DNA of 64,000 nt from Asterias rubens (taxonomy: Eukaryota). The notes beneath the pieces are model-generated. The model worked only from the letters and a program-made list of their open reading frames with translations. It did no database searches and was not told where the DNA came from. The stretch is from NCBI RefSeq assembly GCF_902459465.1, contig NC_047062.1, positions 16,740,001 to 16,804,000 of the forward strand, written 5' to 3'. Made by a program: the position numbers and the translations under genes. The number at the start of each line of letters is the position of its first letter. Position 1 is the stretch's first letter. Positions 16,501 through 44,900 of the stretch are shown one piece after another.

Positions 16501-19500
16501 ATTTCATAAGATTTTGTATTCAGATTTTTATTACTATTTTACTACCTTTATTGCCCCAAAATCAAAACACATTTTTGTGCAAAAGGGCCACTAAATTTGG
16601 TCCCTTGATCACATATTAGAATAAAACAAAGAAGCAAAGACAACATAAAAAATGTATATACATAGATAAATCATGGAAATATATAATGAGTAGGGTAGAT
16701 GGCCTTAGCTTTTGATCCAAACCGGACCTTCTTCAGAGGCATAAAACAAGTACAAACAAACACATATCCATTTATAGAAAAAGAGAGGGGAAAGGGATTA
16801 ACGGAAGGATTCAGAAAGAATCATGGAAATATATATACAAGTCATAAAATCAAAGAAACAAATTTATACATATGATTAACAATAAGATAGCAAAATGTTT
16901 GTTTTGACTGTACAGTTTACAAACATTTTTGAATAAAAACAAAAATATTGGGAATTTCTTACCATGGTCAGCGCCAAGAAATCTGAATTTGGGAAGCATC
17001 TTTGGGTAGAGCGGATCCAGTGTTACTTGTATGGATGAGTTATTACCTGCAAACAATTGACAAATGGAAGTATTGTTTGAAATGTCAAGACCACACTGGC
17101 TCTTCTCATCAGTACCAACGTCGCACAAAAGAGATTTACACATGGTTGTTACCGCAAGTTTACTATTTATTTACAATTTCTTCCTAATTGACAAATGATT
17201 CGGATTAAAAGTAAATACTGTGCCAGCCATTGCATAAAAAAAAAATAAGTATCAAATGGAACGTACAAGATAAATCGACTGGTCTTAGAAATTTACCCAT
17301 GAACCTACCTGGGCCCAATTTCATAGCGCTGCTTAACGGTAAGCAAATTTTCGTGCTTACTGTAGCAGAACATTTTGCTAAGGTGCAAGCGTATTTCATA
17401 AGTGAGCAGAAACATTTGCATTAATGTGATGTCAATTATTTTAGTGCGGTAAGCACCAGAAGGTTAGCATGCCTTTTTGTGTGCTTACGGTTAGCAGCAG
17501 TATGAAATGGAAATCACACAGTAAGCACAAAATTGGCTGCTAAGCAGAGTAATTTGCCTGTTGATTGTTTTCACAGATCTCAGGAACGTACTGAGGATAC
17601 AGTGCTTAACACGTGCAGTGTGAAGGCCGGTTTATAGTGGATGGTCGTGTGATGGTCGCCAAATTAACCAAATTAAACAAATAATTAAATTGAAAATATC
17701 ACACTGGACAAAAGATAACATAGACAAGGCTGATTGATAAAGAAGACTGCCTACCAAGAGCAATTCTCCTGGCTGTGTCTGAAGGACGAGGCTTCTCCGG
17801 TTCTAGAACCCAGGTCTGCTCGTCAATCTCGCTCACAGTATCCCAGAAATCCTTGTACTTCTCCAAGCACCCCTCAAACTGCTTATAAATATCCGCTAAC
17901 GAACTCTGAAAATCAGAACACAAATAAAGAACAAGTAATCATTGCTTTAGTTCTTCGTAATCATTTTATTGTAAGGTGCTTTTGTTAATTTTTAGTATGG
18001 AAAATGCGGGGTATAAATTTCATTAACACTATTATTATTATTATAACCTGTTGGATAAAAGAAATTACTTTTTGAAATCATAAAACAAACATCCATGATG
18101 TGTTGTGCATTCAGAGCAAACTTTATGTACATTTGTAAATTTGTAAAGTTAAGCAGTTTAGGAGAAAATTGTGGTCTAAACTTCTCTCTTTTTGTTGCTT
18201 TGCAATGCAAGAGAAATAGTTCAACCTCATGACCATGACTAAGTGTGAGACAAGCAAGGGAGTCAGGTTACTTTGTACCTAGACAACTTCGTACCTTTAC
18301 AAGTTTGTTCCTTGACCACTTTGGACCTTGAAACTTCAAATTTCACTGCAGTTTGTTCAGGTGAGAAAAGAAAACACTCTGCCAACCGACTGCCCTAAAG
18401 TACTGAATGATTGAAATAAAAACTAACTTTCCGCGTCCAGTGTAGTTCAAATGCATCTCCAGGTAGATCTGTTGTGCAGGTTGGAGCCACAACTGGATGC
18501 TAAGAGAGGGGGAAAGGAAATCATTACTTAATAATTAATCCCACTCTTTTTCATAACATTTGCTGGTGAATTTATCAACCACTTCAAACCATTAAACGTT
18601 TTGGTTTATTTATGGTACATGTAAATACAACAGTGCAAAGAACTGTCTGTACTAAGCATAAACAACAAGAACAGCCTGGCCAGGATTTGAACCCATACTC
18701 TCACACCACCATGATTTGTGTTGATACTACCCACTTGACAATACACAATTTTCAGCCATCTTTGGGGGAAAATTGTTTGAATGCACAACGTATTATGTGT
18801 AAATAATGTGTGCGACACTCATGAGTTTTAAGCATATCAATGTCCTTGCACAATTGGACGATGAATCACTTGGTCGGGTAGAAAAGTTAGGACAGCAGAT
18901 CGCAGCCAAAACCCAAGTTGCCCGTAAAGATGGCCTCCATCGTGCACTATCGATAGATATACCTTAAATATAGATATATTAACTACCAGTTAATCTCCTA
19001 GGCAGTGTTTAAGCATCATCTAGCAACAGTATCCAGCATTCTCCTGAAGACAATCAGGGCATACTGATTAAATCGTTGAGTTGTTGACCATTTTTTTTCC
19101 CGCACCAGCTCTACTCAAAGAGATTTACAAATGGTGCTACTACAAACCTCACCTAATAATAACAATAAAAGATTTACCTGAGGATCCATATGTACTGTGA
19201 TACAATGATCTCGGCCATTATCCCCCCTGGAAGTTAACTCTAAACGTCTGAATGATGGATCCACATAGGACAGCTTCTCCCATCCTAATTGGTTGATGTC
19301 TTGCATCACTTGGGAGCACTGTGTCGACATGGTCATGCTAGTCCGTTCTTTCTGTCCGTCATAACGATGCTGCATTGTGAGCTCCTAAAATTTGAACATT
19401 TTGTTCAAAAAGTGATTCCACTTTCAAAATTCAAAAAATTGAAGGCAATACCTTTTGTTTTTGCTTTATTTCGAGCACCATCTTATTTCTTTTTTATACT

Positions 19501-21377
19501 TAAAAAAAAATAAAATATGTATTTCTATTTATTTCAAACCTGCATCTTTACAAAGTCTACACCATCCGTCGGTTGACTGATCATTTGGGTCCCTCGAGTA
19601 TAAATAGTTTTGTTAATACAAGAAACAAAAGGCAACTCATCTCAACCAAGCAATAAACAACCACCCATAGCTCCAAAACCAGCAAGGTATAGTAGACTAC
19701 ACAACCAACAGTTTATAGAACAAACTGCTAGAACAAATACTTTCCTACAGTTCGTCATACCCAGAATAGTTAGGACATTGAATAAAATCCCACAGATGCC
19801 CCAGGAACGATGCCATTAGGAAGTTGACTTAAAGGCACTGGACACTATTGGTAATCACTGTTAGCATTAAAAACTTACTTATTAAATAGAGCTCAGCTGT
19901 TGATTGTGAGAAACCCTCTGAAGTAACGTAGTTTTGGAGTAAGAAGTAATTTTCCACGCAAATATTTTAATTTGATTTTGGATGAGACCTCGTGTGACAA
20001 GGGTTTCTTCTTTCTTCCATTATTGTCTCGCAACTTTGACGACCAATTGAGTCTAAATTTTCACAGGTTTATTATTTTGTGCGATGAGATCAACCAAGTA
20101 AGAAGACTGGTCTTTGACAATTACCAAAGGTGTCCAGTGTCTTTAAGTTCAGTTCTATCTCACTTAGGGCCTTCTTGAGAAACATCCTCGCAGATTATTT
20201 AGAACCAACATCAAGATCAAAATTAAATGTTAATGAAAATTATGAGACCAAAATAATACTTACCATAATATGTTTAAGTTCACTTAAAAATGTAGCCAGG
20301 TCTGGAGTATTCTTCAATCTCTTACTAATCTGATGAGAATGGAGATACTGGTTGAGTTGCCAATCACCGAGCAACTTGGCCCTCGTGTGATCACCGTCTT
20401 CAGGAATTTCAATTCTTAGATGCATATCAAGACCCTTTTAAAAAAAATCAAGAATACAAATTACTAGGGTTCATTTATCAACTATTTCAAGATTGAATGA
20501 GCAGAATTTATTTGTCCTTTTTCCGGATGAATTAGAAGAACAAAGTTTGTGGATGGAAAAGTTATTATTAAAAAAAAACAATTATCATTATTTATTCGAC
20601 AAAGATTCAAAGAGTTAGACAATTAAATTCACAACAATACAGTATATACGAGTAAACAGAATCGTGCATTATAGAAAATATAAATCAAAATTATTAAAAT
20701 CAAATAATTCTAAAAGCCAGCAAGCTTGTAGTCTGGCTTTTTCCTCCTTCGGGGAAAAAAAGAGGAAGAAAGAAGAGCCCCTATCCTCCTCTTTAATTTT
20801 CTGCCGTCGATTTCACCAAACTCTTCCTAACTTAGGATTAATCTTTGGACTTAGTAGGATGAGTTAAGTTCTGTACCCATAGACGTAAGGACGCATTGAA
20901 TGCGTCCTAAGTTAGGACGGGTTACTTGTCCTAACTCGAACTCGCCCCGTCTCTACATGTAGATAGGATTAATCCTAGCGTTTCGTGAAGTCAGCTGCAG
21001 GGCGTTAAACTTATACTTTTTTCTTACTGGGCCCAACAGGCTACACCAAGAGCAGTCAAGATAATCAAACCAAGAGCAGTTAAGTATGATCAAGTTAATC
21101 CTACAATGGTCTAGATAATTTTAAGAAGGCTGTATCCGAATTGGCGGCTACAGTTACAGCTCTGACTGTTGCATTTTGGGTGGTGCTCTGGACGTCCCTA
21201 GGCTTCTAAGCATGATGGAGCAGAAATCTAGCCGTAGCTGTAGCCGATAATTCGGGCACGACCTAAATAATTAGTTACCTTGATAGTTATGAAACCTTCC
21301 CAGCAGGTCTGCTGTTTGTTCAGAGGTATCAGACTTGGACATATCTCAAACACCTTCTGATTCTGCTTGGTCGCCAT
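13551..21377 (-). CDS. FANCL: E3 ubiquitin-protein ligase FANCL (ELF, DRWD and RING domains), 376 aa
   Basis: Exons 21377-21279, 20434-20264, 19384-19178, 18499-18428, 17905-17755, 17046-16963, 14579-14452, 14005-13889, 13652-13551 total 1131 nt; all introns GT-AG and phases match. Motifs: FWDTVSEIDEQTWVLEPEKP..TARRIALG, LDPLYPKMLP..FLGADH, RING ECAIC..CDSPQC..FHYNCLYEWL..IFGECPYCSKPI. Confidence 0.96.
14055..14410 (-). mobile_element. Degenerate tRNA-derived CORE-like SINE
   Basis: GCAGGTACCCATTT..CCCTGAGTGAAGAGAAGC and GGATTCAAGCCCACACTC match the 3770 and 6185 copies. Confidence 0.65.
14747..15126 (+). mobile_element. Kolobok-type MITE, family A
   Basis: Flanked by TTAA; nearly collinear with 10503-10873. 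Confidence 0.85.
16702..16741 (-). ncRNA. Fossil minimal hammerhead ribozyme motif (Penelope/retrozyme-like)
   Basis: Reverse strand: UGCCU-CUGAAGA-A-GGUCC(gguuu)GGAUC-AAAA-GCUA-AGGC. Stem I (4 bp) and stem II are present; the GAAA core reads AAAA. Confidence 0.55.
17312..17560. mobile_element. GGCCCAATTTCATAG family MITE (CWG TSD, Harbinger-like)
   Basis: The left end CTG|GGCCCAATTTCATAGCGCTGCTTAA is shared with copies near 11113, 42412 and 52321; a right end of the family lies near 22040-22125. Confidence 0.6.
19038..19080 (+). ncRNA. Degenerate hammerhead-like motif
   Basis: CUC-CUGAAGA-C-AAUCAG(ggcaua)CUGAUU-AAAU-CGUU-GAG. Stems I and II pair; the GAAA core is mutated. Confidence 0.35.
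19833..20142 (-). mobile_element. Kolobok-type MITE, family A (reverse orientation)
   Basis: TTAA|AGGCACTGGACAC...GTGTCCAGTGTCT|TTAA. Confidence 0.8.
20804..20997. mobile_element. MITE homologous to 6267-6429 (inverted)
   Basis: CTG|CCGTCGATTTCACC...CGTGAAGTCAGCTG|CAG; shares AGTTAGGACG and GGATTAATCCTAG. Confidence 0.75.
21127..21265. mobile_element. Harbinger-type MITE (GGCCGTGTCC family), degenerate
   Basis: GGCTGTATCCGAA..GGCTACAG pairs with CTGTAGCC..TTCGGGCACGACC; related to 51563-51677 and 58326-58454. Confidence 0.6.
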
Positions 21378-21499
21378 TCTGATCGAAGAACAAGCAATTG
21401 GATCAATAAGTATGAATACATGTTAAATTTGCATCTGGGATATTTTTTTAAAGTTCAATTGAGTTCAAATTTTTACAGAATTGTTATTTTATGCATTAA

Positions 21500-21835
21500 A
21501 GCCATTAGACCCTTTTGGTAAACAGTATTTTCCAAGGCCCACACATTGTGTATCACAACTTTATATATAAATAACAAACCTGTGGAAATTTAGGCTCAAT
21601 CGGTTATCGGAGTCGGGAGAAAATAACAGGAAAACCCATCCTTGTATCCGCACGTTTCGCCGTGTCATGACATGTGTTTAAAATAAATCTGTAATTCTCG
21701 CTATCGAAAATTGATATTGTTTTACTGTTTTCTCAAAAAGTTAAGCATTTCATGGACTAATATTTCAAGAGAAGTATTTCACCACTACCTTCTGTAAACC
21801 CTGTAAGTTATTTGTAAATCTGTGAACTTTTTTTA
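21500..21835 (+). mobile_element. Kolobok-type MITE, related family, right end truncated
   Basis: Starts TTAA|AGCCATT and contains ATAACAAACCTGTGGAAATTT shared with family A. Confidence 0.5.
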
Positions 21836-22525
21836 AAGCCAAAGGCGCCGGGATGGGCAAACGTATCATGCACTGTCATTGGTTTAATATAATGCGCAGT
21901 TCCATCATTCATACATCACACTCACACTGCACGCACTGTACGCATGACGTACTTCCTGAACAAGAATCTGTGCAAGCGATTAGCCCATCCCAGCGGTCCT
22001 GGATAGACTGGCCGCTGGGGCCGAGCGAAGCCTTTCCGCTTGCTTACGGTTAGCAGCGCTATGAAATAGAAATTGCACAGTAAGCACAAAATCAGCCGCC
22101 AAGCCGCACTATGAAATTGGGCCCTGGCTGTTGACTTCACTTTCCCATCATCCCAGTTTAGCCCAAATGGGGCTGTAATTTAATCCATTTGCAGTGTAAA
22201 TGGATTAATTAACCAAGTAACAAGTACTTTTATTTATAAGGACTTAAGTACAAGGCTAGGTAGTAAAAGTAAATGCAGGTTTTTATTTATACGGCCCAAT
22301 CATTAACCATTATTAAGGGCCTACCACTAGTTAGTGACACTACACCAGACAATCCGAATGAGTGATGACTAAATAAATTGTCAAAAACTTCGAATAAAAA
22401 TTAAGTAAGGATCCTGCCAAACAAAGAGGGCGTTGCCGACTTAAGTTTTAAACAGCATTTAAACATCATTAGGATGCCCAGCATCACAAGGAATAAGAAA
22501 GTTAGCTAAATAAAAGCATACTTAC

Positions 22526-22616
22526 TTCCCACAAGGAGGTAGAAATGCTTCCCAGGTAAACAGTTCATGACCACTTCACTTGCATTTCTTGCTTGTCACA
22601 CACACACAGCTGCAAG
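22526..22616 (-). other. FANCL: 3' part of the putative non-coding FANCL exon 1
   Basis: Strong donor GGAA|GTAAGTATG at 22525. The FANCL ATG lies 1 nt after acceptor TTCTTCGATCAG| (exon start 21378), so an upstream exon is required. Confidence 0.5.
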
Positions 22617-24228
22617 ACCAGGCTGAACTCAGCACTAAATTTAGTGCTAGCACCAAATTTGGTGCTGGCGAGAAATTTGGTGCTGGCACCAAATTTCAAA
22701 ACAACCTGTCAACACACCGTCATGACGAAGCAACGGCGGCGCGATAATAACCGTTACAGGCAGTAAGAGGTACTACGGTATGTTAAATGTTTTCAAAGTA
22801 AAATCAATAAACCTTCAAATTTTTCTTGCGCGCTTTTTCGTATGTAGAATGTGCGTTATACGGGCTGTACTATGCAAATGTTTAATTAGTTGGGCTGAGC
22901 TAATTAGCCAATCTATTCATTAGGGGCGCCTAGGTATGATGGTTTGGAATCTAGGAAAGACATCTGCGAAGAAAAATCTTAAGATTTATCGATTTTACTT
23001 TGAAAACATTTGAAATTAAAATTAGTATTATTAGATACTTGCGCTTTTTTCGTATATAGAATGTGCGTTATACGGGCTATATTATGCAAATGTTTAATTA
23101 GTTGGGCTGAGCTAATTAGCCAAAGTATTCATTAGGGGCGCCTAGGTATGATGGTTTGGGATCTAAGGAAGACATCTGTGAAAAAATCTTAAGATTTATC
23201 GATTTTACTTTGAAAACATTTCAAATTAAAATTGGTACTATTCGATACTTGCGCTTTTTTCGTATATAGAATGTGCGTACAGGCTATATTATGCAAATGT
23301 TTAATTAGTTGGGCTGAGCTAATTAGCCAATCTATTCATTAGGGGCGCCTAGGTATGATGGTTTGGGATCTAAGGAAGACATCTGTGAAAAAAAATCTTA
23401 AGATTTATTGATTTTACTTTGAAAACATTTGAAATTAAAATTAGTATTATTAGATACTTGCGCTTTTTTCGTATATAGAATGTGCGTTATACGGGCTATA
23501 TTATGCAAATGTTTAATTAGTTGGGCTGAGCTAATTAGCCAAAGTATTCATTAGGGGCGCCTAGGTATGATGGTTTGGGATCTAGGGAAGACATCTGTGA
23601 AGAAAAATCTGAAGATTTATTGATTTTACTTTGAAAACATTTCAAATTAAAATTGGTACTATTCGATACTAGCGCTTTTTCGTATATAGTATGTGCGTAC
23701 AGGCTATATTATGCAAATGTTTAATTAGTTGGGCTGAGCTAATTAGCCAATCTATTCATTAGGGGCGCCTAGGTATGATGGTTTGGGATCTAGGGAAGAC
23801 ATCTGTGAAGAAAAATCTGAAGATTTATTGATTTTACTTTGAAAACATTTCAAATTATAATTGGTACTATTCGATACTTGCGCGCTTTTTCGTATATAGT
23901 ATGTGCGTACAGGCTATATTATGCAAATGTTTAATTAGTTGGGCTGAGCTAATTAGCCAATCTATTCATTAGGGGCGCCTAGGTGTGATGGTTTGGGATC
24001 TAAGGAAGACATCTGTGAAGAAAAATCTTAAGATTTATCGATTTTACTTAGAAAACATTTAACATACCATATTACCTCTTACTGCCTGTAACGTTTGTTG
24101 TCGCGCCGCCGTTGCTTCGTCATGACGGTGTGTTGACAGGTTGTTTTGAAATTTGGTGCCAGCACCAAATTTCTCGCCAGCAACAAATTTGGTGCTAGCA
24201 CTAAATTTAGTGCTGAGTTCAGCCTGGT
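22617..24228. mobile_element. 1.6-kb foldback element: TIRs of about 200 bp around six tandem repeats of about 210 bp
   Basis: 22617 to about 22815 is the reverse complement of about 24030 to 24228. Units start near 22829, 23040, 23250, 23460, 23671 and 23880. Flanks GCTGCAAG (22609-22616) and GCAGCAAG (24229-24236) form a possible 8-bp TSD with one mismatch. Confidence 0.9.
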
Positions 24229-24313
24229 GCAGCAAGTCCGTGTTTTCATCATAAAATTAGTAGCGCCCTCTTCCATCAGAAAATAGGCATGTCAAAAATG
24301 ACCGTACGCACCT

Positions 24314-24328
24314 TTCAAAGCGGCCGCC
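24314..24328 (-). promoter_or_regulatory. CDE/CHR tandem element (GGCGG-N4-TTTGAA), candidate FANCL core promoter
   Basis: The reverse strand reads GGCGG CCGC TTTGAA, oriented towards FANCL, within a CpG-rich patch (24240-24360). Confidence 0.55.
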
Positions 24329-24384
24329 GTTGTTGAAACTATGGGGCGCCGTTTGTCCATTAATTGTTTGACACTATTAAGGCA

Positions 24385-25095
24385 TGTTTTTACCATGGTT
24401 TACAGCAATTAGATGTAAACCATAGAAACTGTTGCCAAATCCTGTTATGGTTTACATACCAGTAAAGTATTTGTTGTGTATAAGTTTATGGTTTACAAAC
24501 CATGAACATACAAAAAACATTTACAAATCGTGGTTCATAAACCAAGAAAATTTACGCATCTTAAAAACATGGTTAATAAACCATAAAAACTGAAGCATCA
24601 AATTCATGGTTTACAAATCATGGTTTATAAACCATGAAAATTGAGACATCTAAAAAACATGGTTTATAAACCATGAAAATTGAAGAATAAAAATCGTGGT
24701 TTACAAATCATGGTTTATAAACCATAACAAATGAACCATAAAATCATGGTTTGTGACCATGGTTTATAAACCATGAAAATCGAGACTTCTTAAAAAACAT
24801 GGTTTATAAACCATAAAAATCGAGACTTCTTAAAAAAATATGGTTTATAAACCATGAAAATTTACACATCTCAAAAACGTTGTTTGTAAACCATAAAAAA
24901 AAAAAAAATGTGCTCTTACAAATCATGGTTTACAAACCATAAAAATGTGCACTCACAAATCATGGTTTACAAATCATAAAAAATGTGCACTCACAAATCA
25001 TGGTTTACAAACCATAAAAAATGTGCACTCACAAATCATGGTTTACAAACCATAAAAAATGTGCACTCAGAAATCATGGTTTACAAACCATCTGA
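24385..25095. repeat. Satellite-like array of about 38-40 bp units with a palindromic CATGGTTTATAAACCATG core
   Basis: More than 15 recurrences of CATGGTTTA(T/C)AAACCAT; near-identical units at 24920-25090. Confidence 0.85.
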
Positions 25096-28000
25096 CCCGA
25101 CATCAAACATGAATTATGCATACTATGTTTTATTCACACGACACCAAAGTCTATGACGTACGTCCTATACTAGGTCTCCTTTTCCGTCTACCGCGCAATA
25201 TTAAAATATTTTAAGTGACAATGACAACAATTTTTTTATTTTATTTATTGTATAACTGTTATAAATTTCGATAAGCGTAATAAATATTAAGTCTACATTT
25301 AAGAGAAAATATCATAGATTGGTTTCTTATCTCCTGAAACCAAACATTACTGGTCTGAAATGGGGAAAACAGGATTGTTATGAAGTGTGAGTGCATCAAG
25401 GGGGGGTGGGGTGTTTTACTTTCATGCCTTATGATATCTCTGGATTCTAATATAGTAGCCATAATGCATTAGGACAAAAATGTAATTAAATTTGTTAAGT
25501 ACTAATTGAATAATATTTTTGATTTACTTTGCCCGCCATACTAGCTTCTGAAAATTCAATAAAATACCAACCAATAAAAGGGGTGAAAACATATGACGTT
25601 GCTCCAATGTCGTGCATGCACAAGCACTGTCAATGGCGGACTGTCTTTTGCAACGTAAAACCAGAACTTTAAAAATTTCAACACACCATGAAGTGAAAGT
25701 GTTATTGTTAAAAAATTGGATAGATGATTTGAAAAAAAAAAATTAGTTTTTTAATGTGAACATTTTTCCTGTTATCCTACTGAAAACACATGACACCAGG
25801 ATATACCAAGGATCTTTGGGGAACTTAAAATAATAAAAGCTTTCAGTCTAGGTAGTAGGTAGAGGCTAGGCGGGAACTCGGCCTGATGAGTATGTCGAGC
25901 GCCATTTCCCATAATTATGGGAAAACTCGTTTTCATAATTTTCACTGGAACAGCAAAGTTTCACGAGCTTAACTGTAATTATAGGTAGAGTAAAGTTTCC
26001 CATAACTAAGTTGCTTATCAAATTTGCCAATCGTTTTTTTAGGGCCCTCACCGTCATAGAATGATCCGAGATGCAGCGTATTCCCGCACCGCTCCACGTG
26101 GGTAGATGATCTGCTCGCCCAAAATAACCTATCCGTTATCTAATTATCACGTTCTTGCATAACGTTGGTGATAAATGCATATCTGTTCTATTTAATATCA
26201 GGGAGTCGGGCTTCGGGTAAAGCCTTCACCCTCGTTATTTTGTGATTTAACCATGAAGGAAGACAAATTCATAACCCAAGGATCCGCCGGTATATAACCG
26301 TTGATTGAAAGGACCACACTAACAAGTCAAATAGCTAATCACAGACGGCTTGCATATTCTCCATGGGTAGGCCTACCCTCATCATTCTGTGGACATAATA
26401 ACCCAATGGATCAACAAGATATTTCGTTAATCCCACACAATGATTAAAAGGACACACTTCATAGGCCTACACAGAAAATAACAAGTAAAATAGATACCAT
26501 GTTTCTTATGACCATCAGCTAGTAACAAATAATAACGTATACTTGCATGTTGATGATTAATGCATATATGCTTATGATATGTTACCAACCATGATGAACA
26601 GTGGAGACGATGTCAGATGCAATTGTGTACACCATGCAATACTGTCCGCATATGCAATCGTGTCCAGGACTATACAAAAACCGTATGTATGTGTGCCCGG
26701 TAAGCGAGCGTGCATGCATTGAACCTGCTTATATGCAGCATGAATATTCATGTATTTTATGATTGCAGCGGCCTAGTTTCAGAGATATTGGAGAGAACTC
26801 ATTTTTCTGCTATGGCTGCCACTAATTTGCATATTGTTAAAATTACTTACCACTAATAATAACTTCATAAATTTTTTAATCCTTTTATGAGACCTTCAAA
26901 ACATGGGTATAGCACTTCAATTGTCATCTTTGCTTTCCTAGTTACCGAGATATTGAAGAAAAATCATTTTTCTTCAATGGCTGCACTAATTTGCATATTT
27001 ATGATGATTAATTACCACTTATTTCTTTGGAAATGTTATAATCCTATTCTGTGACCTTCAACATCTAGGTATAGACTCATCACTTGTCATTTTTACTTGC
27101 CTGGTTACAGGGGTTTGCTTAAAATGGTTCAAAAAGGTCAAAAATATGATTATGCAAATTAGATGGTCAAAAATTCAAAAGTTCGCTTGGGAACCATTTT
27201 TTTTCGGATTCAGCACACCAAAATTGTGTTAAAAATCTAGTTCCGCACTTTTACCCCAAAATGCCTCAATCAGTCAGTTTTTCCAGAAATCCGTGTAGAC
27301 TATAAGGCATGGTATCTGTTTTACTTTTTCTTTTCTGTGTAGGCCTATACATTGTAATCATTGTGTGGGATTAACGAAAGATCTTCCTGATCCAGTGGGT
27401 TTTATGTCACCACAGAATGATGAGGGTAGGCCTACCTTTTCTGAAGGCCGTTGTCGCATGCAATTATGTCCTCTATGCAATACTATCCGGAGGACATTAT
27501 TGCATATGCAAAAATGTCCGCCGGACGGTTTTGCATATGCAATCATGACTGCCTGGACGCTGCTGCATAATGCAATTGTGTCCGCCCGGACACATTTGCA
27601 TATGCAGTTGTGTCTGCCCCCATGCAAAACCGTCCTTGCAGTAAATTAAACGCCCTTGGTCGACGATGGTCGACGGCACACGTTTGCCATTTTTTAACAA
27701 GCCAAGTGTGCATGTCATGAATGGGTATAGCCATGACAAAGAAATGTTTTTACCTATGTTCTGAGGGTCAGGCAATGCATGTAGTGCGTTCATTGGCAAA
27801 TCAGATGCTTATGCAAATGAGTTGGTATAGCTACACGTACTTATTTATGCAAATCAGCTAGTCTGACTACCAATACATTTCATAATTCATCACTTTTTGT
27901 TCAATCGATGCATTCCTACAATAGAGTTTTTGCAAAACATTTGCATCTCTGATGCAGTTTTAGCAACGACAGTAAAGACAAACCCAGGAGAACTATCCTC

Positions 28001-28149
28001 TTTAATTCTTAACAAACTCCTGCTGCTTGGCTTCATGCGCCAAACCCTGTTTTTGAAACTGATTGGCAGAGGTGTAAAAGGCAATTTTAAATGTTGCCGA
28101 AAAACCAGATCATTCCGAGCAGGTTAGGCTCGTCAGCTATGGTAGACAG

Positions 28150-28325
28150 GCCACCTAGGAGAAGAAAAACTCTGATCACACTTCCAGGTAGGTAGAATTC
28201 CTAAGCCTAGATTGGTAATCTACCTAGGAGAAGGACCTCTCTGATCACCATCCAGGGTAGGTAGAACTCCTCAGCCGAGATTGGTAGTATATATACCTAG
28301 GAGAAGGACCTCTCTGAACTAACGT
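28150..28325. repeat. Three degenerate tandem units of about 75 bp
   Basis: ACCTAGGAGAAG(G/A)A..CTCTGA and GTAGGTAGAA..AGATTGGTA are repeated. Confidence 0.6.
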
Positions 28326-28619
28326 ACGTTCACATCCTAGTGCGAACGAGGGCAGCAACCAGGGTAGTCCTGAGAGGAGTGGTACCCCAAAGTCTTATTA
28401 TAGCCTTTAAAGGAAGCTAATGGTAAATCGTATGGCAAAGCATTTACTTCAGGTCCCGAGAGTGGCCAGGATCGATGCTGCGGACAGGTGTGCTGGCCAG
28501 GTCTTGGCCTGACAGAATGGCATTGCCTCCCCCCCCTTCCCGGAGGAGGTTATCCGACGACAGCCCAAAGTCCAATGCGATCTGCGATACAGGAGGCCGC
28601 TCATTATGGCTACCTTCAA

Positions 28620-28910
28620 CAAACACAGTGAGGAAGGATGCGAGGGTCAGAGAGATGGACCATTGTGAAGTGATCTTGGCAGGAGTCATGAAGGGGATAC
28701 CCTCCCCTTAATTCATTTTCATCAGTGACTTCCCCCTCAGACGTGCTATCGGCAGACACAAGGTGGATCTTGGATTCACATTGATGCCAAAGAGATCGAG
28801 CCTATCCCGTAGTATCCATGCCCGACCTTGACTTTGCTGATGACATCAGTCTCTTCTTTAACACCACCGCCCAGGCACAAGAACTTCCACTCAATGCTAG
28901 AAAGACAGGT
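28620..28910 (+). pseudogene. Frameshifted reverse-transcriptase fragment of an RTE-clade LINE
   Basis: Translates in shifting frames to ..ILAGVM(K)G.. and DLDFADDISL..NTTAQAQEL, typical of RTE RT motifs. Confidence 0.6.
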
Positions 28911-29059
28911 GATTACATACAACATCTAAGACCATGCACCTCTGACCACATTAGAGGTTGAGCTTTGTCAGTGTCCTGATGAGAGATGCTGAGGCAGAGA
29001 CCACAGCAGAGTTGGCTGCCTGCATAAATGGGCAGGGAGGCTGAGAGACGCCGCCGGAG

Positions 29060-29360
29060 ATTCCGCCTGCCCGCGACATGATGATAGAGAGCAGGTCGTC
29101 CAGTTCACTTGCCGGACGTCCTAAAGCATGGGCTTCTGCCAAGTCCACTTCACTTGCTGAAAAGTTTGAATAAGGAGATGATCTAACAAACTTTAAGACA
29201 AACTTTGCTGAACCTACCAAAATGTCCTCCTGGAAAATGTCAATGAGCAAAACAAATTGCTTAAGTCGGAGAGTGCCAGCAATGGGTATCACTGACCTCG
29301 ACTGCACTGATGGCATTCTCTTCTACATGGCGGACTTGGCACGAGAATTACCTGCAGCTC
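29060..29360 (+). pseudogene. Degraded Academ-like transposase fragment (middle region)
   Basis: RPVHLPDVLKHGLLPSPL..NKEM, then TDGIL..DLARE, resembles the remembered LxxELxPxPLSL..G.M..K and IDG motifs; stops and frameshifts are present. Confidence 0.4.
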
Positions 29361-29431
29361 CAATTTAGCAGAGTACTTCATAATAAGAGAAGTTAAGATG
29401 TTAAATATGACTTCAGTTAAACTTAAGGAAG

Positions 29432-29775
29432 ACCAAGACCATTTGTAACCGTTTGTTATAAAATGCATATGGTTAGAAAGATGTTTAAAAGTAGAATACA
29501 ATGATCCACACAACATTGCCTCGAAAATGCGTGGTTTTCCTTTCCTTTGCGAACTAACACGGTCGGCCATTTATGGGAGTCAAAAGTTGACTCCCATAAA
29601 TGGCTGACCGTGTTAGTCGACGAGGTAAAAGGAAAACCGCGCAATTTCGAGGAATGTTTGTGTGGATTATTGTATTCTACTTTTACAACATCTTTCCACC
29701 CAAATGCATTTCGTAACAAACGGTTACAAATGCTTTTTATAGACCAACTCGTCCGATCCAAGGCAACGTGTTCCT
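29432..29775. mobile_element. Palindromic Kolobok-type MITE (family B), left terminus truncated
   Basis: Self-complementary about GGGAGTCAAAAGTTGACTCCC; ends GTGTTCCT|TTAA. Homologue at 48188-48549; a lone right terminus lies at 30553-30592. Confidence 0.8.
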
Positions 29776-30269
29776 TTAAGCAAATCTCTGTAACATGACA
29801 ATCAAAAATTACAAGTGATGCATCAGTACCTCGATGTTGAAGGTCACAGAGTAGGATTAAAACATGTTTGAAGTAATTAGTACTAATTAATACTCATGAA
29901 TATGCAAATTAGTGGCCGCCATTACAAAAACATGATTTCTCTTCAATATCTCTGTAGCTAGGCAAGCAAACATGATAAACGAAGTGTTTTTCCTATGTTC
30001 TGAGGCTGAACCAATGTGATCAATGATAAGCAAGATGCTTTTTATGCAAACGAGCTAGCAAAATAGCTTTAAATGCTTATTTATGCAAATCAGCTAGTAT
30101 GGCTACAAATGAATTTCATAACAGTTCATGAATGAATGCTTCATGTTAAGGCCCCTTAACTTTACACCGAAATACTACTTGATGCTAATACAGGCCGAAA
30201 GAGCAATTGGTGTCACTCACCAATCCCTCATAAGTTGGGTATAGAATGAACTGCTGTTGCCTAGGAACA

Positions 30270-30530
30270 TGTAGTCATACAGCGAGTTTCATCACCAATC
30301 TGTTGCTGAAATGCACGCATTGCTGTGCATTGAAACCCATGCTTCTGGCATGAACACAAAGTATCTTCCAGCAGGTAACTTTTAATGACATCAGTATGGG
30401 CTGTGGTTCTGAGTCACCATGTTCCCATCCATTGTACATGGGCTCAGAAAGCTCAGGTATAGAGCAGTGAACATTCCACCAAATAATGATTGATAGGAAG
30501 TACGCATCAAATTGAAACCTGGAGCATCAA
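30270..30530 (-). pseudogene. Degraded Academ-like transposase C-terminus with a CXC cysteine motif
   Basis: Frameshifted RTSYQS(x)IWWNV..IPELSEPMYNGWEHGDSEPQPILMSL..CSCQKHGFQCTAM matches the remembered RxxYQxxIW..PxxxGW..LM..CxCxxxxLxCT pattern. Confidence 0.55.
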
Positions 30531-31679
30531 TCTTGCATAGTTCACACCTTGATCGACCAACTCGACCGATCCAAGGCAACGTGTTCCTTTAAAATGGTTC
30601 AAAAAGGTCAAAATATGATTATGCAAATTAGATGGTCACAAACTCAAAATTTCGCTTGGGAACCATTTTTTTCTGAGTCAGCACGCCTGAAATGTATTAA
30701 AAAGTCTGGTTCCCTGCTTTTACCCCAAAATGCCTCAATCACCTTAATTAGAGCTCTTTTTCAGAAATCCGCCTAGACTATTATCCTAAACAATCATCAG
30801 CTAATACAAAATAACCACTTAATCTTGCATAATGTTGATGGTAAATGCATAATCTGTTCTATTCGCTGATATTTTTGTTCGCTGATGAATGATGCAAAGG
30901 ACTGTGAGGAGCACCAAAATTATAAGTATCATCAGATAAAGTGTACTATTGTATGAAAATCATATTTGGTGCTAATGAATTGGTCCCTACGGGTCCTAAA
31001 ACCCTTTGACGATGGATCCTGCCCACAAAATTTGTCAAAAGCGACTTTGCAGTTTGAGGTACCCTATTTTAGTTCTGGGGAGCATATTCTCACAGCTGAG
31101 TAGTTATCTACACATGGTGTTCCCGCAAACTGAATACACATAGGCCTAGTCTAGAAATGGTAGTTCATTCCTCCAAAGATTTGAGACACTAAACTTTTGC
31201 ATTGTACAAGTTTTTTTTTTTTTTAAGTTCTTTGCAAAGGGGAAAATTAAATAAAAAAATCTGAAATAAATTAAAACAATATAAACCACTATTACAGCAA
31301 CATCACATTCTACAAAATAAACAACACATTTTTTTAAATAGACATAATAACATAATATGTTTATTTATATCGCACCATAAACTAATAATTTACATCACAC
31401 AAAACAATTAAAGTATCTGACAAACATAAAAGTAAACTATTTACCATGAAGGTGGATTTTATCAATATTTATTGCCCTCTGATGTTATTGCTCTTAAATA
31501 ATTAGAAAATTTAAGACTGAGATTCTTTCTACATGATAAAACTTATTTCTTAGAAAGTCACGATTTAAAAAATAACTTGTTTCAAAAGACATGTTTTAAA
31601 CTGTGCCTAATTTCTTTGAATTGTCAAGCACATCTGCACAGCTGAATTTCGCGAGCAACTACTCAGAAATATTTTAAAA

Positions 31680-32400
31680 TGCTGATCCACAAGCTTTGCA
31701 AAAAAAACGCACTGGTTCTAGTTTTAGGCAGAGTACACAATAATCCAAAGGCTTTGCAACACAGCAGCCCTGTTTCCTAGTTTTGAAAAGTACACATGCC
31801 CGGCTGCAAAGGCTTTGCAAAACACTGGAAGTTTTGGCCAGTTTTGGCCAGTACAAAATGCATAGCTGCAGCAAAGGCTTTGCGAAAAAACAGCCTTTGG
31901 TGTAGTTTTGGCCAAAACACAATGCTGAAAAGGCTTTGCAATGCAGTAGTAGCCCTGATTAATAGTTTTGGCCAGTACACACTGCTCCAAAGGCTTTTTC
32001 ATAACAGCAGCCCTGTCTCTAGTTTTGGCCAGTGCACACTGCTCCAAAGGCTTTTCCATAGCAGCAGCCCTGTCTCTAGTTTTGGCCAGTGCACACTGCT
32101 CCAAAGGCTTTTTCATAACAGCAGCCCTGTCTCTAGTTTTGGCCAGTACACACTGCTCCAAAGGCTTTTTCATAACAGCAGCCCTGTCTCTAGTTTTGGC
32201 CAGTACACACTGCTCCAAAGGCTTTTTCATAACAGCAGCCCTGTCTCTAGTTTTGGCCAGTGCACACAGATGAACTTGGCTTTGTACAACACCAGTACTT
32301 GGCAAGTATAAAAACAGCTTCAAAGGAAGTGCAAAACAGAAGCCCTGGCTGCAATTTTCCCCAGTACAAAGTGCTCCAAATACTTCAGCACTAGCTCCAG
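31680..32400. repeat. 57-bp minisatellite (near-perfect 31960-32270, degenerate flanks)
   Basis: Unit TAGTTTTGGCCAGT(A/G)CACACTGCTCCAAAGGCTTTTTCATAACAGCAGCCCTGTCTC; produces 19-aa repeat ORFs on both strands. Confidence 0.9.
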
Positions 32401-32856
32401 CTTTTAGCCAAGTGTTCAAATCGTGACTTTTCAGCTTTTTTTTTTTTAGCAAGGCCATTTGAAACCATTACGTGAGGGAGTAACCCCAGAAATTACACAT
32501 CTATGCAGGAAGGTTACACTAGCTACTATACTGACAGGGAAGTTCAACAAGTTACTGGCTCCCCAGAAAGCCAAAAGGTTTGATTGGCAGGGGGAGAAAT
32601 AATGGTAACCTCATGGTCAGTAAGACTTCTGGAAGCCTGCTGCAATGAACAAACTACTCTATAAAAAACACTACACAATGTTTCTGATCCCCTCTTAGAC
32701 ATGTTGAATGGTCCAGTCTACTTACAAAATTCTGAGTAAACACCCCCTACATAAAATAAGACTAAGTATACAGTGTATGTAACTACAGTTGCAATTATTA
32801 TGTAAAACTCTTTTCACCACAAACTTTTTACTCTAATAGTCAATCGAATTCCCCCA

Positions 32857-41900: not shown

Positions 41901-44900
41901 GGATAATTTTAGTTTGAAAATTTGCTCAATGTGAAATGCCTGAAATCTTCATTCAAGGGAATGTATCTAACTTGACAACGCAATCAACTGTTCACTAATA
42001 AAAAATGCGAAACTTGTGACGGAAATGCATAGTACAGCACTATGTATGTAACATGGAATAGTTTTTTTCAATAATAAGCATCAATACTATTATTATTACA
42101 CGGAATGATTTTCAATAATAACAATAAATACTCTTATTATTACAATACCTATATATACCTAAATTGACCAAACAGATGAACTCTGATTAACACAAGTTAT
42201 CTTGAGTTTGAGTAATTTCAGTAGCATTTGTGCAGATGGTGAATGGTGAGAGAAGAAAAGGGATGTTTATAAGTTATACGCACTTGCCAATTAAAATTCA
42301 AAAGATGATTAGTCTGGAGTCAAACTAAGGAAAACACCCAGCACCAAGGGTTTCTTTTGAAAACTGCGAACAGATGGTGCTGGTGAAAGAGGATGAGGGC
42401 CGCTGGTTCTTGGGCTCAAATTCATGAAGCTTTTTTAAAGGTAGAAAATCCTGCATGACAAATTTCTTTGCAAAGCAAAAATTGAGTCAGGTACCGGCCA
42501 CAACAAAGCAAACTTAAGATAATTTGGGCTGGTAAACTGTTTCTGCTAAACAATAGTATAATGTGCTTAGCAAGATTTTGTGCTTACAGGCTTTATGAAA
42601 TTGGGCCCTCATGGGTTCTACAATGTAATGCCCTTTCATACAAGACAATTCTTAACAAAAGAGCTTGACTAAAATCACATCGATGTTAAAAATCCAATAA
42701 AAATCCAATTGTGTGAAAGCTATGTTTTTAAATAATAACCAGGAGAGGAAAAAGCTCAATTGGTGGAGCACTTGCACGTTAATCCAGAGGTCGTTGGTTC
42801 AAACCCCACTCTAGTAATTTTTTTTTTTTCAACCCAAAATCATATACAAATTTACTAAGTCAATTTTCCTTGTTGTTTACGATTTGATAAAATAATAACC
42901 TAGGAGACTTGTTATTTTTAACAGAGATCACCCAAAAATAGCAAACAGGTTAAAATCACTATGATATGTAAAATTATTGCTAAAAGGGATGTTTGTAAAT
43001 TTATGTTTTAAGAAGTATTGTGAAAGCCTTGTAAACCTCATATCAGGAGACTGCCGTACAGGAGACTGTTGCAGTTATCTAATAGAGATGAGACAAAGCC
43101 GTGAATCAAGGTTTCAGTAGTAGTTTTGTTTAAGAAGGAGCGAATCTTTCCAATCCTTCTCAGAGCAAGAGAGGCGTTTCGGCAGACTATGTTGATGTGG
43201 CGACGCATGTTCAGATTCTTGTCAATGATGACACCCAGGTCACGCACTGATGTTGAAGATGTGACCTGACCACTATCTATATTGATCGGGGAGAGCTCTT
43301 GACATGGTCTGAATTGGGAAGCTACATGAAGAACTTCCATCTTGTTGTCATTAAGGACCTTGTTGTCTAGCATCCCTCATAGCATCACTCATAGTTGGGA
43401 AGATCAGTTGGAAGCACTCCGATGTCCCTGGCATTGGCAAATACACTTGTATAGCTGAGCTTTTATCTTCCCCTAGTATAGGCCTAAAGTTATAAAACAT
43501 GTTGCCATTTTATGCCTCTTTTTTCCCTCTAATCGTTTTGGGTTGTGGTTTTCTGTTTGAGTGGGCAGGGAAGAAGCAGCTTCATTCACCCCTGAGGGGA
43601 AGAGGGGAAGATACAAGCCTTTGATATATTTTTTTTCGTGTGAATGAAGCGACGTACGCAAAAGCCACATACTAGCTCTCTCTCACTCTCTCTCTCTCTC
43701 TCTCTCTCGAGCCTGTTGGCTATACAGCAATCTGTGCAAGGCTCTCTTTTATCCCCCACGATCAATATCCTCGTCACAGCCAGTCAATTTCCAGCAACCT
43801 GTTGAGCCTCCTCAATTGATATCTGATACTAGGTAAAACACAACTGCCAACCTAAAATAGACCAACACATCTGCCTGGTATCGAGCGAGCGGCCAAAGGA
43901 ATGGCCTGGTGGGGGAGTTTACTTGTTTCTGATGACCCACAACTATAGTTTGCAATGCACTTGACATGTTATAGACAAGTGTCCCTCAACAAAACAACCA
44001 GTTGAAGCTGCTTTCCTTCAGTTAACTATGCACGACACATTTATCTTCTCATTTGTTACCCTTCTTTTTTGCAATCAGTTGCAGATCTAGTGTATGATTA
44101 TAGCATAGTACATGGTAGAACCATGGAGGAAGGAAGAGAAGGGACTTCAAAAGCCAAACCCGTGGTACCGCGGTCGTTTAACGACACCTCGTAATCACCC
44201 ACATACCTTACACAAACAATGGGCAACCTGGCATATATGAGTTTGCACGTGCGCACTTGGTTTTTCACGCAACTACGGCGTTGTACGTCGTATGGATATA
44301 AAAAAGAAAAAAATACTTTTTTGAGACCTGATCAATTTTGTGTATGCTTTCGCCAAAACAAAAAACACAGTTGATACTGACCACCCAAAGTAGGAAGAAT
44401 AACATGCCTTAATATTGCATATAATGGCAATTTTAAAACTGTTTTCCTTTTAAGACTTACAAGCAGTCTAGAATTGGTCAACGTTTAAAAAAGATTTTGT
44501 TTGTACTTCTGCTTATGCTTTTTTTCCCCTTTGACACATGGCAACGTCTGCATTGTACGTAGCTTGTTCTACGCCCCTGTCTTCTAATTAAACCTCATCC
44601 TTCAATAGGCTTGATTGAATCCAGGATATGAAATATCCTGTACGAGTCAATAACCGCCAAATGCTACATTGTAGTCTTGTACACACAATAAAAGACCCGT
44701 CTAATTACAGAGTTAATGAGTTGCAGTCACTCGCCGGTTTCACAAATGCTTGAACAGCACTGCACTATGTACCAGAATTATAGCTTGAAATGCATAAAAC
44801 TACGTTCACATGTAAAGGGCCATCATTCAGAATAGTCAAAAATAAAAAAACAAATTTCCTTATTAATTGTGGGCGGTTCAAAAGAAACAACTGGAAATGC

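What the first reader, a model, noticed from the sequence alone, without database searches (positions are those of the whole stretch)
22526..24360. A 1.6-kb foldback element appears to sit inside FANCL exon 1, between core promoter and splice donor
Seen, in - strand order: CpG patch with CDE/CHR (24328-24314), about 85 bp, the foldback element (24228-22617, possible 8-bp TSD), 90 bp, a strong donor (22525), then the coding exon. Removing the element yields a plausible first exon of about 150-200 nt. With it present, transcripts must either carry 1.6 kb closed by a dsRNA stem of about 200 bp, start downstream, or splice from donors supplied by the TIR. Three GT donor-like sites cluster there: GCA|GTAAGA (24082), GAG|GTAATA (24075) and ATG|GTATGT (24067). 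The TIRs are highly similar, so the insertion looks young. Inference: a transposon has rewired the 5' end of a DNA-repair gene and may be polymorphic.
Basis: partly seen in the sequence, partly recalled or inferred. Interest (0 to 1): 0.75.

Follow-up and report, generated by a model that had tools for sequence, protein, structure and literature searches.

The report
Jumping gene at starfish FANCL start
A 1.6-kb non-coding foldback transposon sits right at the start of the DNA-repair gene FANCL in the common starfish and is absent from its sister species. The gene's messages begin just below the element and do not contain it, so this is a real but ordinary case of a transposon remodelling a promoter.

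Summary
The window is the Asterias rubens reference genome. FANCL lies on the minus strand.

**The element.** At 22617-24228 there is a 1,612-bp element with these features:
- Inverted arms of about 211-226 nt; the outer 128 nt match at 127/128.
- An 8-bp duplication that matches at 7 of 8 positions.
- 18-bp sub-repeats in both arms.
- 5.9 tandem 212-bp units inside.
- No coding capacity.

**Insertion into a once-contiguous region.** The A. amurensis locus runs straight from the conserved upstream patch into exon 1, so the element split a formerly contiguous 5' region.

**Transcripts.** RNA contigs from two runs splice exon 2 (ATG at 21377) to an upstream exon ending at the predicted 22525 donor. 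They stop 26-42 nt short of the element. Both arm bins have no RNA depth.

"Start downstream" fits best. The TIR donors and the 1.6-kb dsRNA-closed leader have no support.

**Not shown here:**
- Whether the insertion hit a transcribed exon or the transcription start itself.
- Whether the insertion is polymorphic.

The CHR half of the CDE/CHR motif is not conserved in A. amurensis.

**Verdict:** a new member of a known kind, of modest interest. The scan has noted other foldback elements in promoters of this genome, on other DNA.

The parts
22617..24228 (.). Non-autonomous foldback-type DNA transposon, 1,612 bp
   Evidence: Inverted arms. Terminal 18-mer found only at the two ends. No Pfam family at threshold in any ORF. 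Absent from the orthologous A. amurensis site.
22617..22842 (+). Arm next to FANCL exon 1. Holds the 18-bp sub-repeats (22631-22696) and an AAATTT-rich stretch (TAAATTTA at 22643-22636 on the minus strand) 27 nt from the flank
   Evidence: RNA depth in bin 22646-22842 is 0 in both RNA runs.
24003..24228 (-). Arm next to the conserved upstream patch. Holds the 18-bp sub-repeats (24149-24213) and the three GT donor-like sites (24082, 24075, 24067)
   Evidence: RNA depth in bin 24025-24221 is 0 in both RNA runs.
22825..24060 (-). Middle domain: 5.9 tandem 212-bp units. Each carries ATTTGCAT, an ATTGG (CCAAT) box, TAATTA sites and a TATA-like stretch, all in FANCL sense
   Evidence: Six ATTTGCAT sites fall one per unit. 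The motifs were read.
22609..22616 (-). Duplication copy CTTGCAGC below the element
   Evidence: Read; matches the upstream copy at 7 of 8.
24229..24236 (-). Duplication copy CTTGCTGC above the element
   Evidence: Read.
22526..22616 (-). FANCL exon 1 as transcribed today. At least 22526-22590 is in mRNA. Carries two upstream ATGs (22585, 22568). The GT of the donor is at 22525-22524
   Evidence: The X1 contig has 65 nt 5' of exon 2, and depth in bin 22449-22645 is 14.8 = 44.8 x 65/197. The same arithmetic reproduces exons 3 and 4 exactly. The orthologous donor is used in the A. amurensis isoform X2 model. uORFs.
21278..21378 (-). FANCL exon 2 with the start codon at 21377
   Evidence: RNA contig pieces in X1 and X2; protein P0270.
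20263..20433 (-). FANCL exon 3
   Evidence: RNA contig pieces.
19178..19383 (-). FANCL exon 4
   Evidence: RNA contig pieces.
24237..24345 (-). Conserved upstream patch (ancestral proximal promoter or leader). Contains GGCGGCCGCTTTGAA at 24328-24314, a roughly 60-nt block about 95% identical to A. amurensis, and TAATTTTAT at 24259-24251
   Evidence: CpG observed/expected is 1.1-1.2 against 0.56 for the window.
24378..25802 (.). Second A. rubens-specific insert just upstream of the patch (boundaries approximate). Includes the array of ATGGTTTACAAACCAT-type repeats at 24380-25100
   Evidence: About 85 nt in A. amurensis correspond to about 1.4 kb here. Repeats.

Best explanation
A non-autonomous foldback-type DNA transposon inserted in the A. 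rubens lineage with an 8-bp duplication. The insertion is at the 5' edge of FANCL exon 1, about 23 nt below a conserved AT-rich (TATA-like) block. It cut the conserved promoter patch (24237-24345) off from the exon.

Shown:
- FANCL is still expressed.
- Its mRNA does not carry the element.
- The assembled 5' ends lie 26-42 nt below the element and splice from the 22525 donor to the ATG exon.

Inferred:
- Transcription now starts at about 22590-22620, at the edge of the element. The outermost part of the arm then serves as the proximal promoter. Its TAAATTTA lies 27 nt from the flank, close to the 23-nt spacing of the ancestral TAATTTTAT.
- The old patch and the six motif-rich tandem units act at most as distal elements.

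The element is therefore best described as sitting at or just upstream of the current start site, not inside the exon as now transcribed.
For: - Identity of the locus: 100% over 18,378 nt to the A. rubens record L002.
- Empty orthologous site in A. amurensis, with both flanks contiguous.
- Spliced RNA contigs in X1 and X2 with 65 and 49 extra 5' nt. The depth arithmetic places the X1 65 nt in bin 22449-22645 with nothing else there.
- RNA depth is 0 in both arm bins, while the DNA runs lay very many contigs on the same bins.
- The A. amurensis X2 protein begins in the orthologous exon 1.
- Outer arms match at 127/128.
- The geometry of the AT-rich boxes was read.
Against: - Contigs show presence, not absence, and lose the last bases of a transcript, so the true start is not measured.
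- The exon 1 piece was inferred from depth and not listed as a piece.
- The genotype of the RNA animals at this site is unknown.
- Promoter activity of the arm is pure inference from spacing.
- About 40 nt around the target (the duplication, (TG)5 and 18 more nt) are also missing in A. amurensis. Excision with deletion there cannot be excluded without an outgroup.
Confidence: 0.55

Rival explanations
1. The ancestral start lies in the upstream patch (about 24290-24330), so the element sits inside a 150-200-nt non-coding exon 1. The old promoter still fires. The element is either carried in the leader or spliced out through donors in the arm.
For: - The patch is conserved, rich in CpG, and carries a unique GGCGGCCGCTTTGAA.
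- GT sites exist at 24082, 24075 and 24067, and a usable acceptor-like CTTGCAG lies at 22616-22610.
- X1 depth in bin 24222-24418 is not fully accounted for by the listed repeat contigs.
Against: - RNA depth is zero in both arm bins in two runs.
- Both mRNA contigs end inside 22526-22616 with no upstream exon attached.
- The CHR half is not conserved in A. amurensis.
Confidence: 0.15
2. The insertion is polymorphic, and the RNA seen comes from element-free alleles whose native start lies at the target site. The reference allele with the element may then be weakly expressed or silent.
For: - The genotype of the RNA animals is unknown.
- The outer arms are 99% identical, which suggests a recent event.
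- A single-copy DNA contig of organism D follows the window up to 22606 and then has 56 letters unlike it.
Against: - An element-free allele would be followed by at least 117 nt of unique conserved sequence, yet that contig stops after 56 nt. That fits a microsatellite length difference followed by the start of a repeat.
- The inner arms differ at 10 of about 83 positions, and the duplication has one mismatch.
- No empty-site joint was among the joints shown.
Confidence: 0.2
3. The element was placed here by an assembly error.
For: No junction-spanning contig was among the pieces listed. The family is repeated in the genome.
Against: The termini are precise, and a 7/8 duplication sits exactly at the ends of the inverted repeat. 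The flanks are exactly those that are contiguous in the sister species.
Confidence: 0.03

Closest known systems
Foldback-type transposons (Drosophila FB, the sea urchin foldback elements, Tetris of D. virilis; PMC4079207)
   Same: Long inverted arms that contain short tandem sub-repeats. A non-coding middle. Tandem repeats of about 210-220 bp inside the element. A duplication of 8-10 bp. Non-autonomous.
   Different: The arms make up only about 28% of the element. The 212-bp units lie in the middle domain in one orientation, not inside the arms. No autonomous partner or superfamily was identified.
hAT-derived miniature elements
   Same: 8-bp duplication, no coding capacity, and CAGG within the first bases of the terminus.
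   Different: With the 8-bp duplication, the terminus reads ACCAGG and not the usual CAG/TAG start. The arms are about ten times longer than typical hAT ends. The transposase could not be tested.
Transposon insertions at gene 5' ends that supply or displace promoters (for example P elements, Mutator and mPing; from general knowledge, not tested here)
   Same: Cut-and-paste element landing at or next to a start site in a CpG-rich promoter. The gene stays expressed, with transcripts starting beside the element.
   Different: Promoter activity of this element's end is inferred from RNA contig ends and motif spacing only.
CDE/CHR cell-cycle promoters (DREAM targets)
   Same: GGCGG, a 4-nt spacer and TTTGAA, within about 100 nt of the ancestral exon, upstream of a DNA-repair gene.
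   Different: The CHR is TTTGGC in A. amurensis. The motif is now about 1.7 kb from the observed 5' ends. Binding was not tested.

Membership tests
Foldback-type non-autonomous DNA transposon | Long terminal inverted repeats with internal short tandem sub-repeats | tested here: met
   Arms of about 211-226 nt, 127/128 identical in the outer part. 18-bp units, about 3.6 copies in each arm.
Foldback-type non-autonomous DNA transposon | Target-site duplication flanking the exact ends of the inverted repeat | tested here: met
   CTTGCTGC versus CTTGCAGC, 8 bp, 7 of 8. This is a single copy, so the family's duplication length is not established.
Foldback-type non-autonomous DNA transposon | No transposase; mobilised in trans | tested here: met
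   The longest ORF overlapping the element is 65 aa. There is no Pfam hit at threshold.
Foldback-type non-autonomous DNA transposon | Many copies with the same termini elsewhere in the genome | tested here: inconclusive
   The DNA runs lay far more contig depth on the element than on single-copy flanks, but such depth is not a copy number. No second copy could be read.
Foldback-type non-autonomous DNA transposon | Presence/absence at orthologous sites | tested here: met
   Absent from A. amurensis, with both flanks contiguous.
hAT superfamily | 8-bp duplication with short conserved termini and a hAT transposase partner | tested here: inconclusive
   The duplication length fits. The terminus ACCAGG and the long arms do not fit well. 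No autonomous copy is available.
Mutator-like foldback elements | 9-10-bp duplication (8-9 in Tetris, PMC4079207) and a MULE transposase partner | tested here: inconclusive
   8 bp is at the edge of the range. No 9-bp match is possible at these ends.
CDE/CHR promoter | CDE, a 4-nt spacer and CHR TTTGAA close to the start site | tested here: met
   24314-24328, unique in the window, 0.03 expected by chance.
CDE/CHR promoter | Conservation of the CHR in orthologous promoters | tested here: not met
   A. amurensis reads GGCGGCCGCTTTGGC.
CDE/CHR promoter | DREAM/MuvB binding and cell-cycle-dependent expression | not testable with these tools
   Needs ChIP or reporter assays.
Transposon-derived promoter | Transcription starts mapped inside or at the edge of the element | tested here: inconclusive
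   Contig 5' ends lie at about 22590 and 22574, 26-42 nt from the element, with no depth on the arm. No cap-based data.

The most novel reading that the evidence does not exclude
The insertion destroyed the ancestral core promoter geometry, and the element's own end rebuilt it. An AAATTT box in the outer arm replaced the ancestral TATA-like box at nearly the same spacing from the same initiator. FANCL then kept its start site while swapping its proximal promoter within the A. rubens lineage. The six octamer/CCAAT-bearing tandem units would be a new upstream module, and the insertion may still be segregating in A. rubens.
Probability: 0.25. Interest if true: 0.5.

Novelty: new member of a known kind. 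Interest (0 to 1): 0.3.

Why it matters
It gives a cleanly bounded, species-specific example of promoter turnover by a transposon at a conserved DNA-repair gene in an echinoderm. The sister species provides the empty site. If the element's end drives FANCL, it would show how a gene can survive an insertion at its start site. It would also offer a natural test of promoter architecture in sea stars. Transposon insertions at promoters are common, and this genome has several, so the value is as an example and not as a new principle.

Tried and rejected
- Exact-protein look-ups of ORFs spanning either junction or lying in the patch and intron 1 found nothing on record.
- The metagenome contigs that carry the exon 3 ORF reach only 423 nt upstream and miss the site.
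- Two scans of metagenome contigs, one with the conserved patch and one with the terminal 20-mer, gave nothing and one chance 20-nt match.
- No copy of the element lies in the A. amurensis locus or the other fetched loci.
- The scan's own notes hold no look-alike by sequence.
- Rfam and tRNA scans of 13-34 kb were empty.
- The bacterial-type promoter scan is irrelevant to an animal gene and was ignored.
- I first took the animal for a fish. The protein comparison corrected this to an asteriid sea star.
- I chose a 5.9-kb stretch for the single read-laying run. High-copy intron repeats then crowded the joint, loose-end and piece tables, so the exon 1 piece and any empty-site joint were not printed.

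Full report
**What is in the sequence.** Read on the minus strand, the region contains these features:
- An inverted repeat at 22602-22827 / 24018-24243, 226 nt, 92% complementary. Aligned from the termini, the arms match at 127 of the outer 128 positions and about 200 of the first 211. The differences are concentrated in the inner third.
- A terminal 18-mer, CCAGGCTGAACTCAGCAC, that occurs only at the two ends, inverted. Chance expectation is 0.02.
- An 8-bp duplication directly outside the ends: CTTGCTGC (24236-24229) and CTTGCAGC (22616-22609), matching at 7 of 8.
- About 3.6 copies of an 18-bp palindromic unit in each arm.
- A middle of 5.9 tandem 212-bp units, 94% alike.
- No ORF overlapping the element longer than 65 aa, and none reaching a Pfam threshold.
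- As RNA, a stem of about 200 pairs.

The motif lies at 24314-24328, is unique in the window, and has a chance expectation of 0.03.

**Which genome and gene.** ORFs on the minus strand below 21400 are FANCL exons, and a VRK kinase converges on it from the plus strand. One exon found a sea urchin FANCL. A search with that protein found named echinoderm proteins. Among them the Asterias amurensis protein is 90% identical to the window's exons. Its cluster also holds the A. rubens protein.

Two loci were then fetched:
- The A. rubens locus L002 is 100% identical to the window over 18,378 nt. The window is therefore the A. rubens reference assembly.
- The A. amurensis locus L001 is the orthologue, 88-94% identical in alignable DNA.

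A genome paper dates the split of the two species at about 28 million years (PMC11090083).

**The sister species has the empty site.** In A. amurensis the conserved upstream patch runs straight into exon 1. The patch contains GGCGGCCGCTTTG and a block of about 60 nt that is about 95% identical, ending in TAATTTTATGATG-AAACA-GG. Exon 1 follows directly as TGAAGTGG-CATGAACTGTTTACCTGG, then the GTAAGT donor.

Two cautions apply:
- A. rubens has about 40 further nt at the site that A. amurensis lacks. They comprise the target octamer, (TG)5 and 18 more nt. The polarity (insertion in rubens versus excision with deletion in amurensis) therefore rests on parsimony and on the near-identical outer arms.
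- The CHR half of the CDE/CHR is TTTGGC in A. amurensis, so that motif fails a conservation test.

**What the RNA shows.** One spliced contig was laid from each of two RNA runs: 2,106 nt at depth 44.8 in X1, and 562 nt at depth 12.8 in X2. X1 is nearly identical to the window. X2 is a related organism, about 3% different in exon 4, and is not A. amurensis by its variants.

Both contigs join 19178-19383, 20263-20433 and 21278-21378. The ATG exon is therefore exon 2, with its acceptor at 21378. They carry 65 and 49 further nt at the 5' end.

Those short pieces were not printed, but the depth table locates the X1 piece:
- X1 in bin 22449-22645 reads 14.8, which equals 44.8 x 65/197.
- The same arithmetic reproduces exon 3 (34.6) and exon 4 (19.8) exactly.
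- So the X1 65 nt lie in that bin and nothing else from X1 does.

With the only strong donor at 22525, exon 1 as assembled is 22526-22590. For X2 the bin holds more depth than its 49 nt explain, so the piece cannot be placed by arithmetic. If it abuts the same donor, it runs to about 22574.

The A. amurensis isoform X2 protein (MNCLPGK followed by MATKQ) independently uses the orthologous exon and donor.

Both arm bins (22646-22842 and 24025-24221) have RNA depth 0 in both runs, and the middle has next to none. The DNA runs lay very many contigs on the same bins, so the stretch is not filtered out.

Mature FANCL mRNA thus does not carry the element. No upstream exon is attached. The assembled 5' ends stop 26-42 nt below the element.

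**Most likely mechanism.** Contigs lose the last bases of a transcript, so the start most probably lies at about 22590-22620. That is in the 26-nt flank or the last bases of the arm.

The spacing supports this. The conserved TAATTTTAT (24259-24251) lies 23 nt above the target octamer. After the insertion, the arm's TAAATTTA (22643-22636) lies 27 nt above the other copy of the octamer.

I infer that the element landed at or just above the ancestral initiator and that its outer end now serves as the proximal promoter. The old patch would be left 1.6 kb away. This is inference: no cap-based data were available, and the genotype of the RNA animals is unknown.

- The alternative in which the old promoter still fires, and the element is carried or spliced out through the arm donors, has no RNA support.
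- Polymorphism remains open. One single-copy DNA contig of another organism departs from the window at 22606 and then has 56 unlike letters. It ends sooner than an empty allele would predict.

**Context.** A second A. rubens-specific insert of about 1.4 kb lies immediately above the patch (24378-25802, with an array of ATGGTTTACAAACCAT-type repeats). This leaves only about 110 nt of conserved promoter between two insertions. The GCH1-FANCL spacer is 6.4 kb in A. amurensis and about 33 kb here.

The scan's notes list other foldback elements in promoters of this genome. Cut-and-paste elements are known to favour gene 5' ends; this last point is general knowledge, not tested here.

**Comparison with known kinds.** The element works like, and passes the structural tests for, a foldback-type non-autonomous transposon. 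Such elements have been described in Drosophila, sea urchin and other organisms. Tetris shows both long arms and internal repeats of about 220 bp (PMC4079207).

The superfamily (hAT, Mutator or other) is undecided. Only one copy and no transposase could be read.

**Verdict.** The element is a genuine, lineage-specific insertion at the FANCL start, but it is not shown to lie inside a transcribed exon. Transcripts begin below it. It is a new member of a known kind, of modest interest.

Noticed in passing
window 24378-25802: Second A. rubens-specific insert just above the conserved FANCL patch. Includes about 700 bp of 38-51-bp repeats built on the palindrome ATGGTTTACAAACCAT. RNA contigs from related copies lie on it. 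Its ends and kind were not worked out.
   Followed up: partly
window 22526-22590 with 21278-21378; L001 10001-10020: The exon 1 ATG (22568) adds MNCLPGK in frame in the A. amurensis model. In A. rubens a 25-nt indel puts it out of frame, giving a 30-codon upstream ORF that overlaps the FANCL start. A 6-codon upstream ORF begins at 22585.
   Followed up: partly
window 22872-23928 and 26825-30628: The octamer ATTTGCAT occurs 24 times in the window against 6.8 expected. Six sites fall one per 212-bp unit of the element, and ten fall in another repeated region upstream.
   Followed up: no
window 19691-20281, 20676-21069, 21464-21857, 21858-22251: Intron stretches of FANCL are very high-copy repeats with enormous contig depth in both DNA and RNA runs. 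The GC-rich stretch at 21900-22100, which looks promoter-like, belongs to one of them.
   Followed up: no
window 25000-54800; L001 1-10000: GTP cyclohydrolase I lies upstream on the same strand. The spacer to FANCL is 6.4 kb in A. amurensis and about 33 kb in A. rubens, filled with repeats and a reverse-transcriptase fragment (43038-43373).
   Followed up: no
L001 10957-11079: A. amurensis isoform X1 (417 aa) takes its first 41 residues from an extra exon inside intron 1. That exon begins where a repeat shared with window 21495-21766 ends.
   Followed up: partly
window 31724-32458: Long ORFs on both strands come from a 57-bp minisatellite (unit peptide like CVLAKTRDRAAVMKKPLEQ). A shorter array is present at the orthologous place in A. 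amurensis.
   Followed up: no
window 22308-22606: A single-copy DNA contig of run X17 (organism D) follows the window to 22606, inside the (TG)5 run, and then has 56 letters unlike it. Either a microsatellite length difference or a different structure at the insertion site would explain this. The letters could not be read.
   Followed up: no
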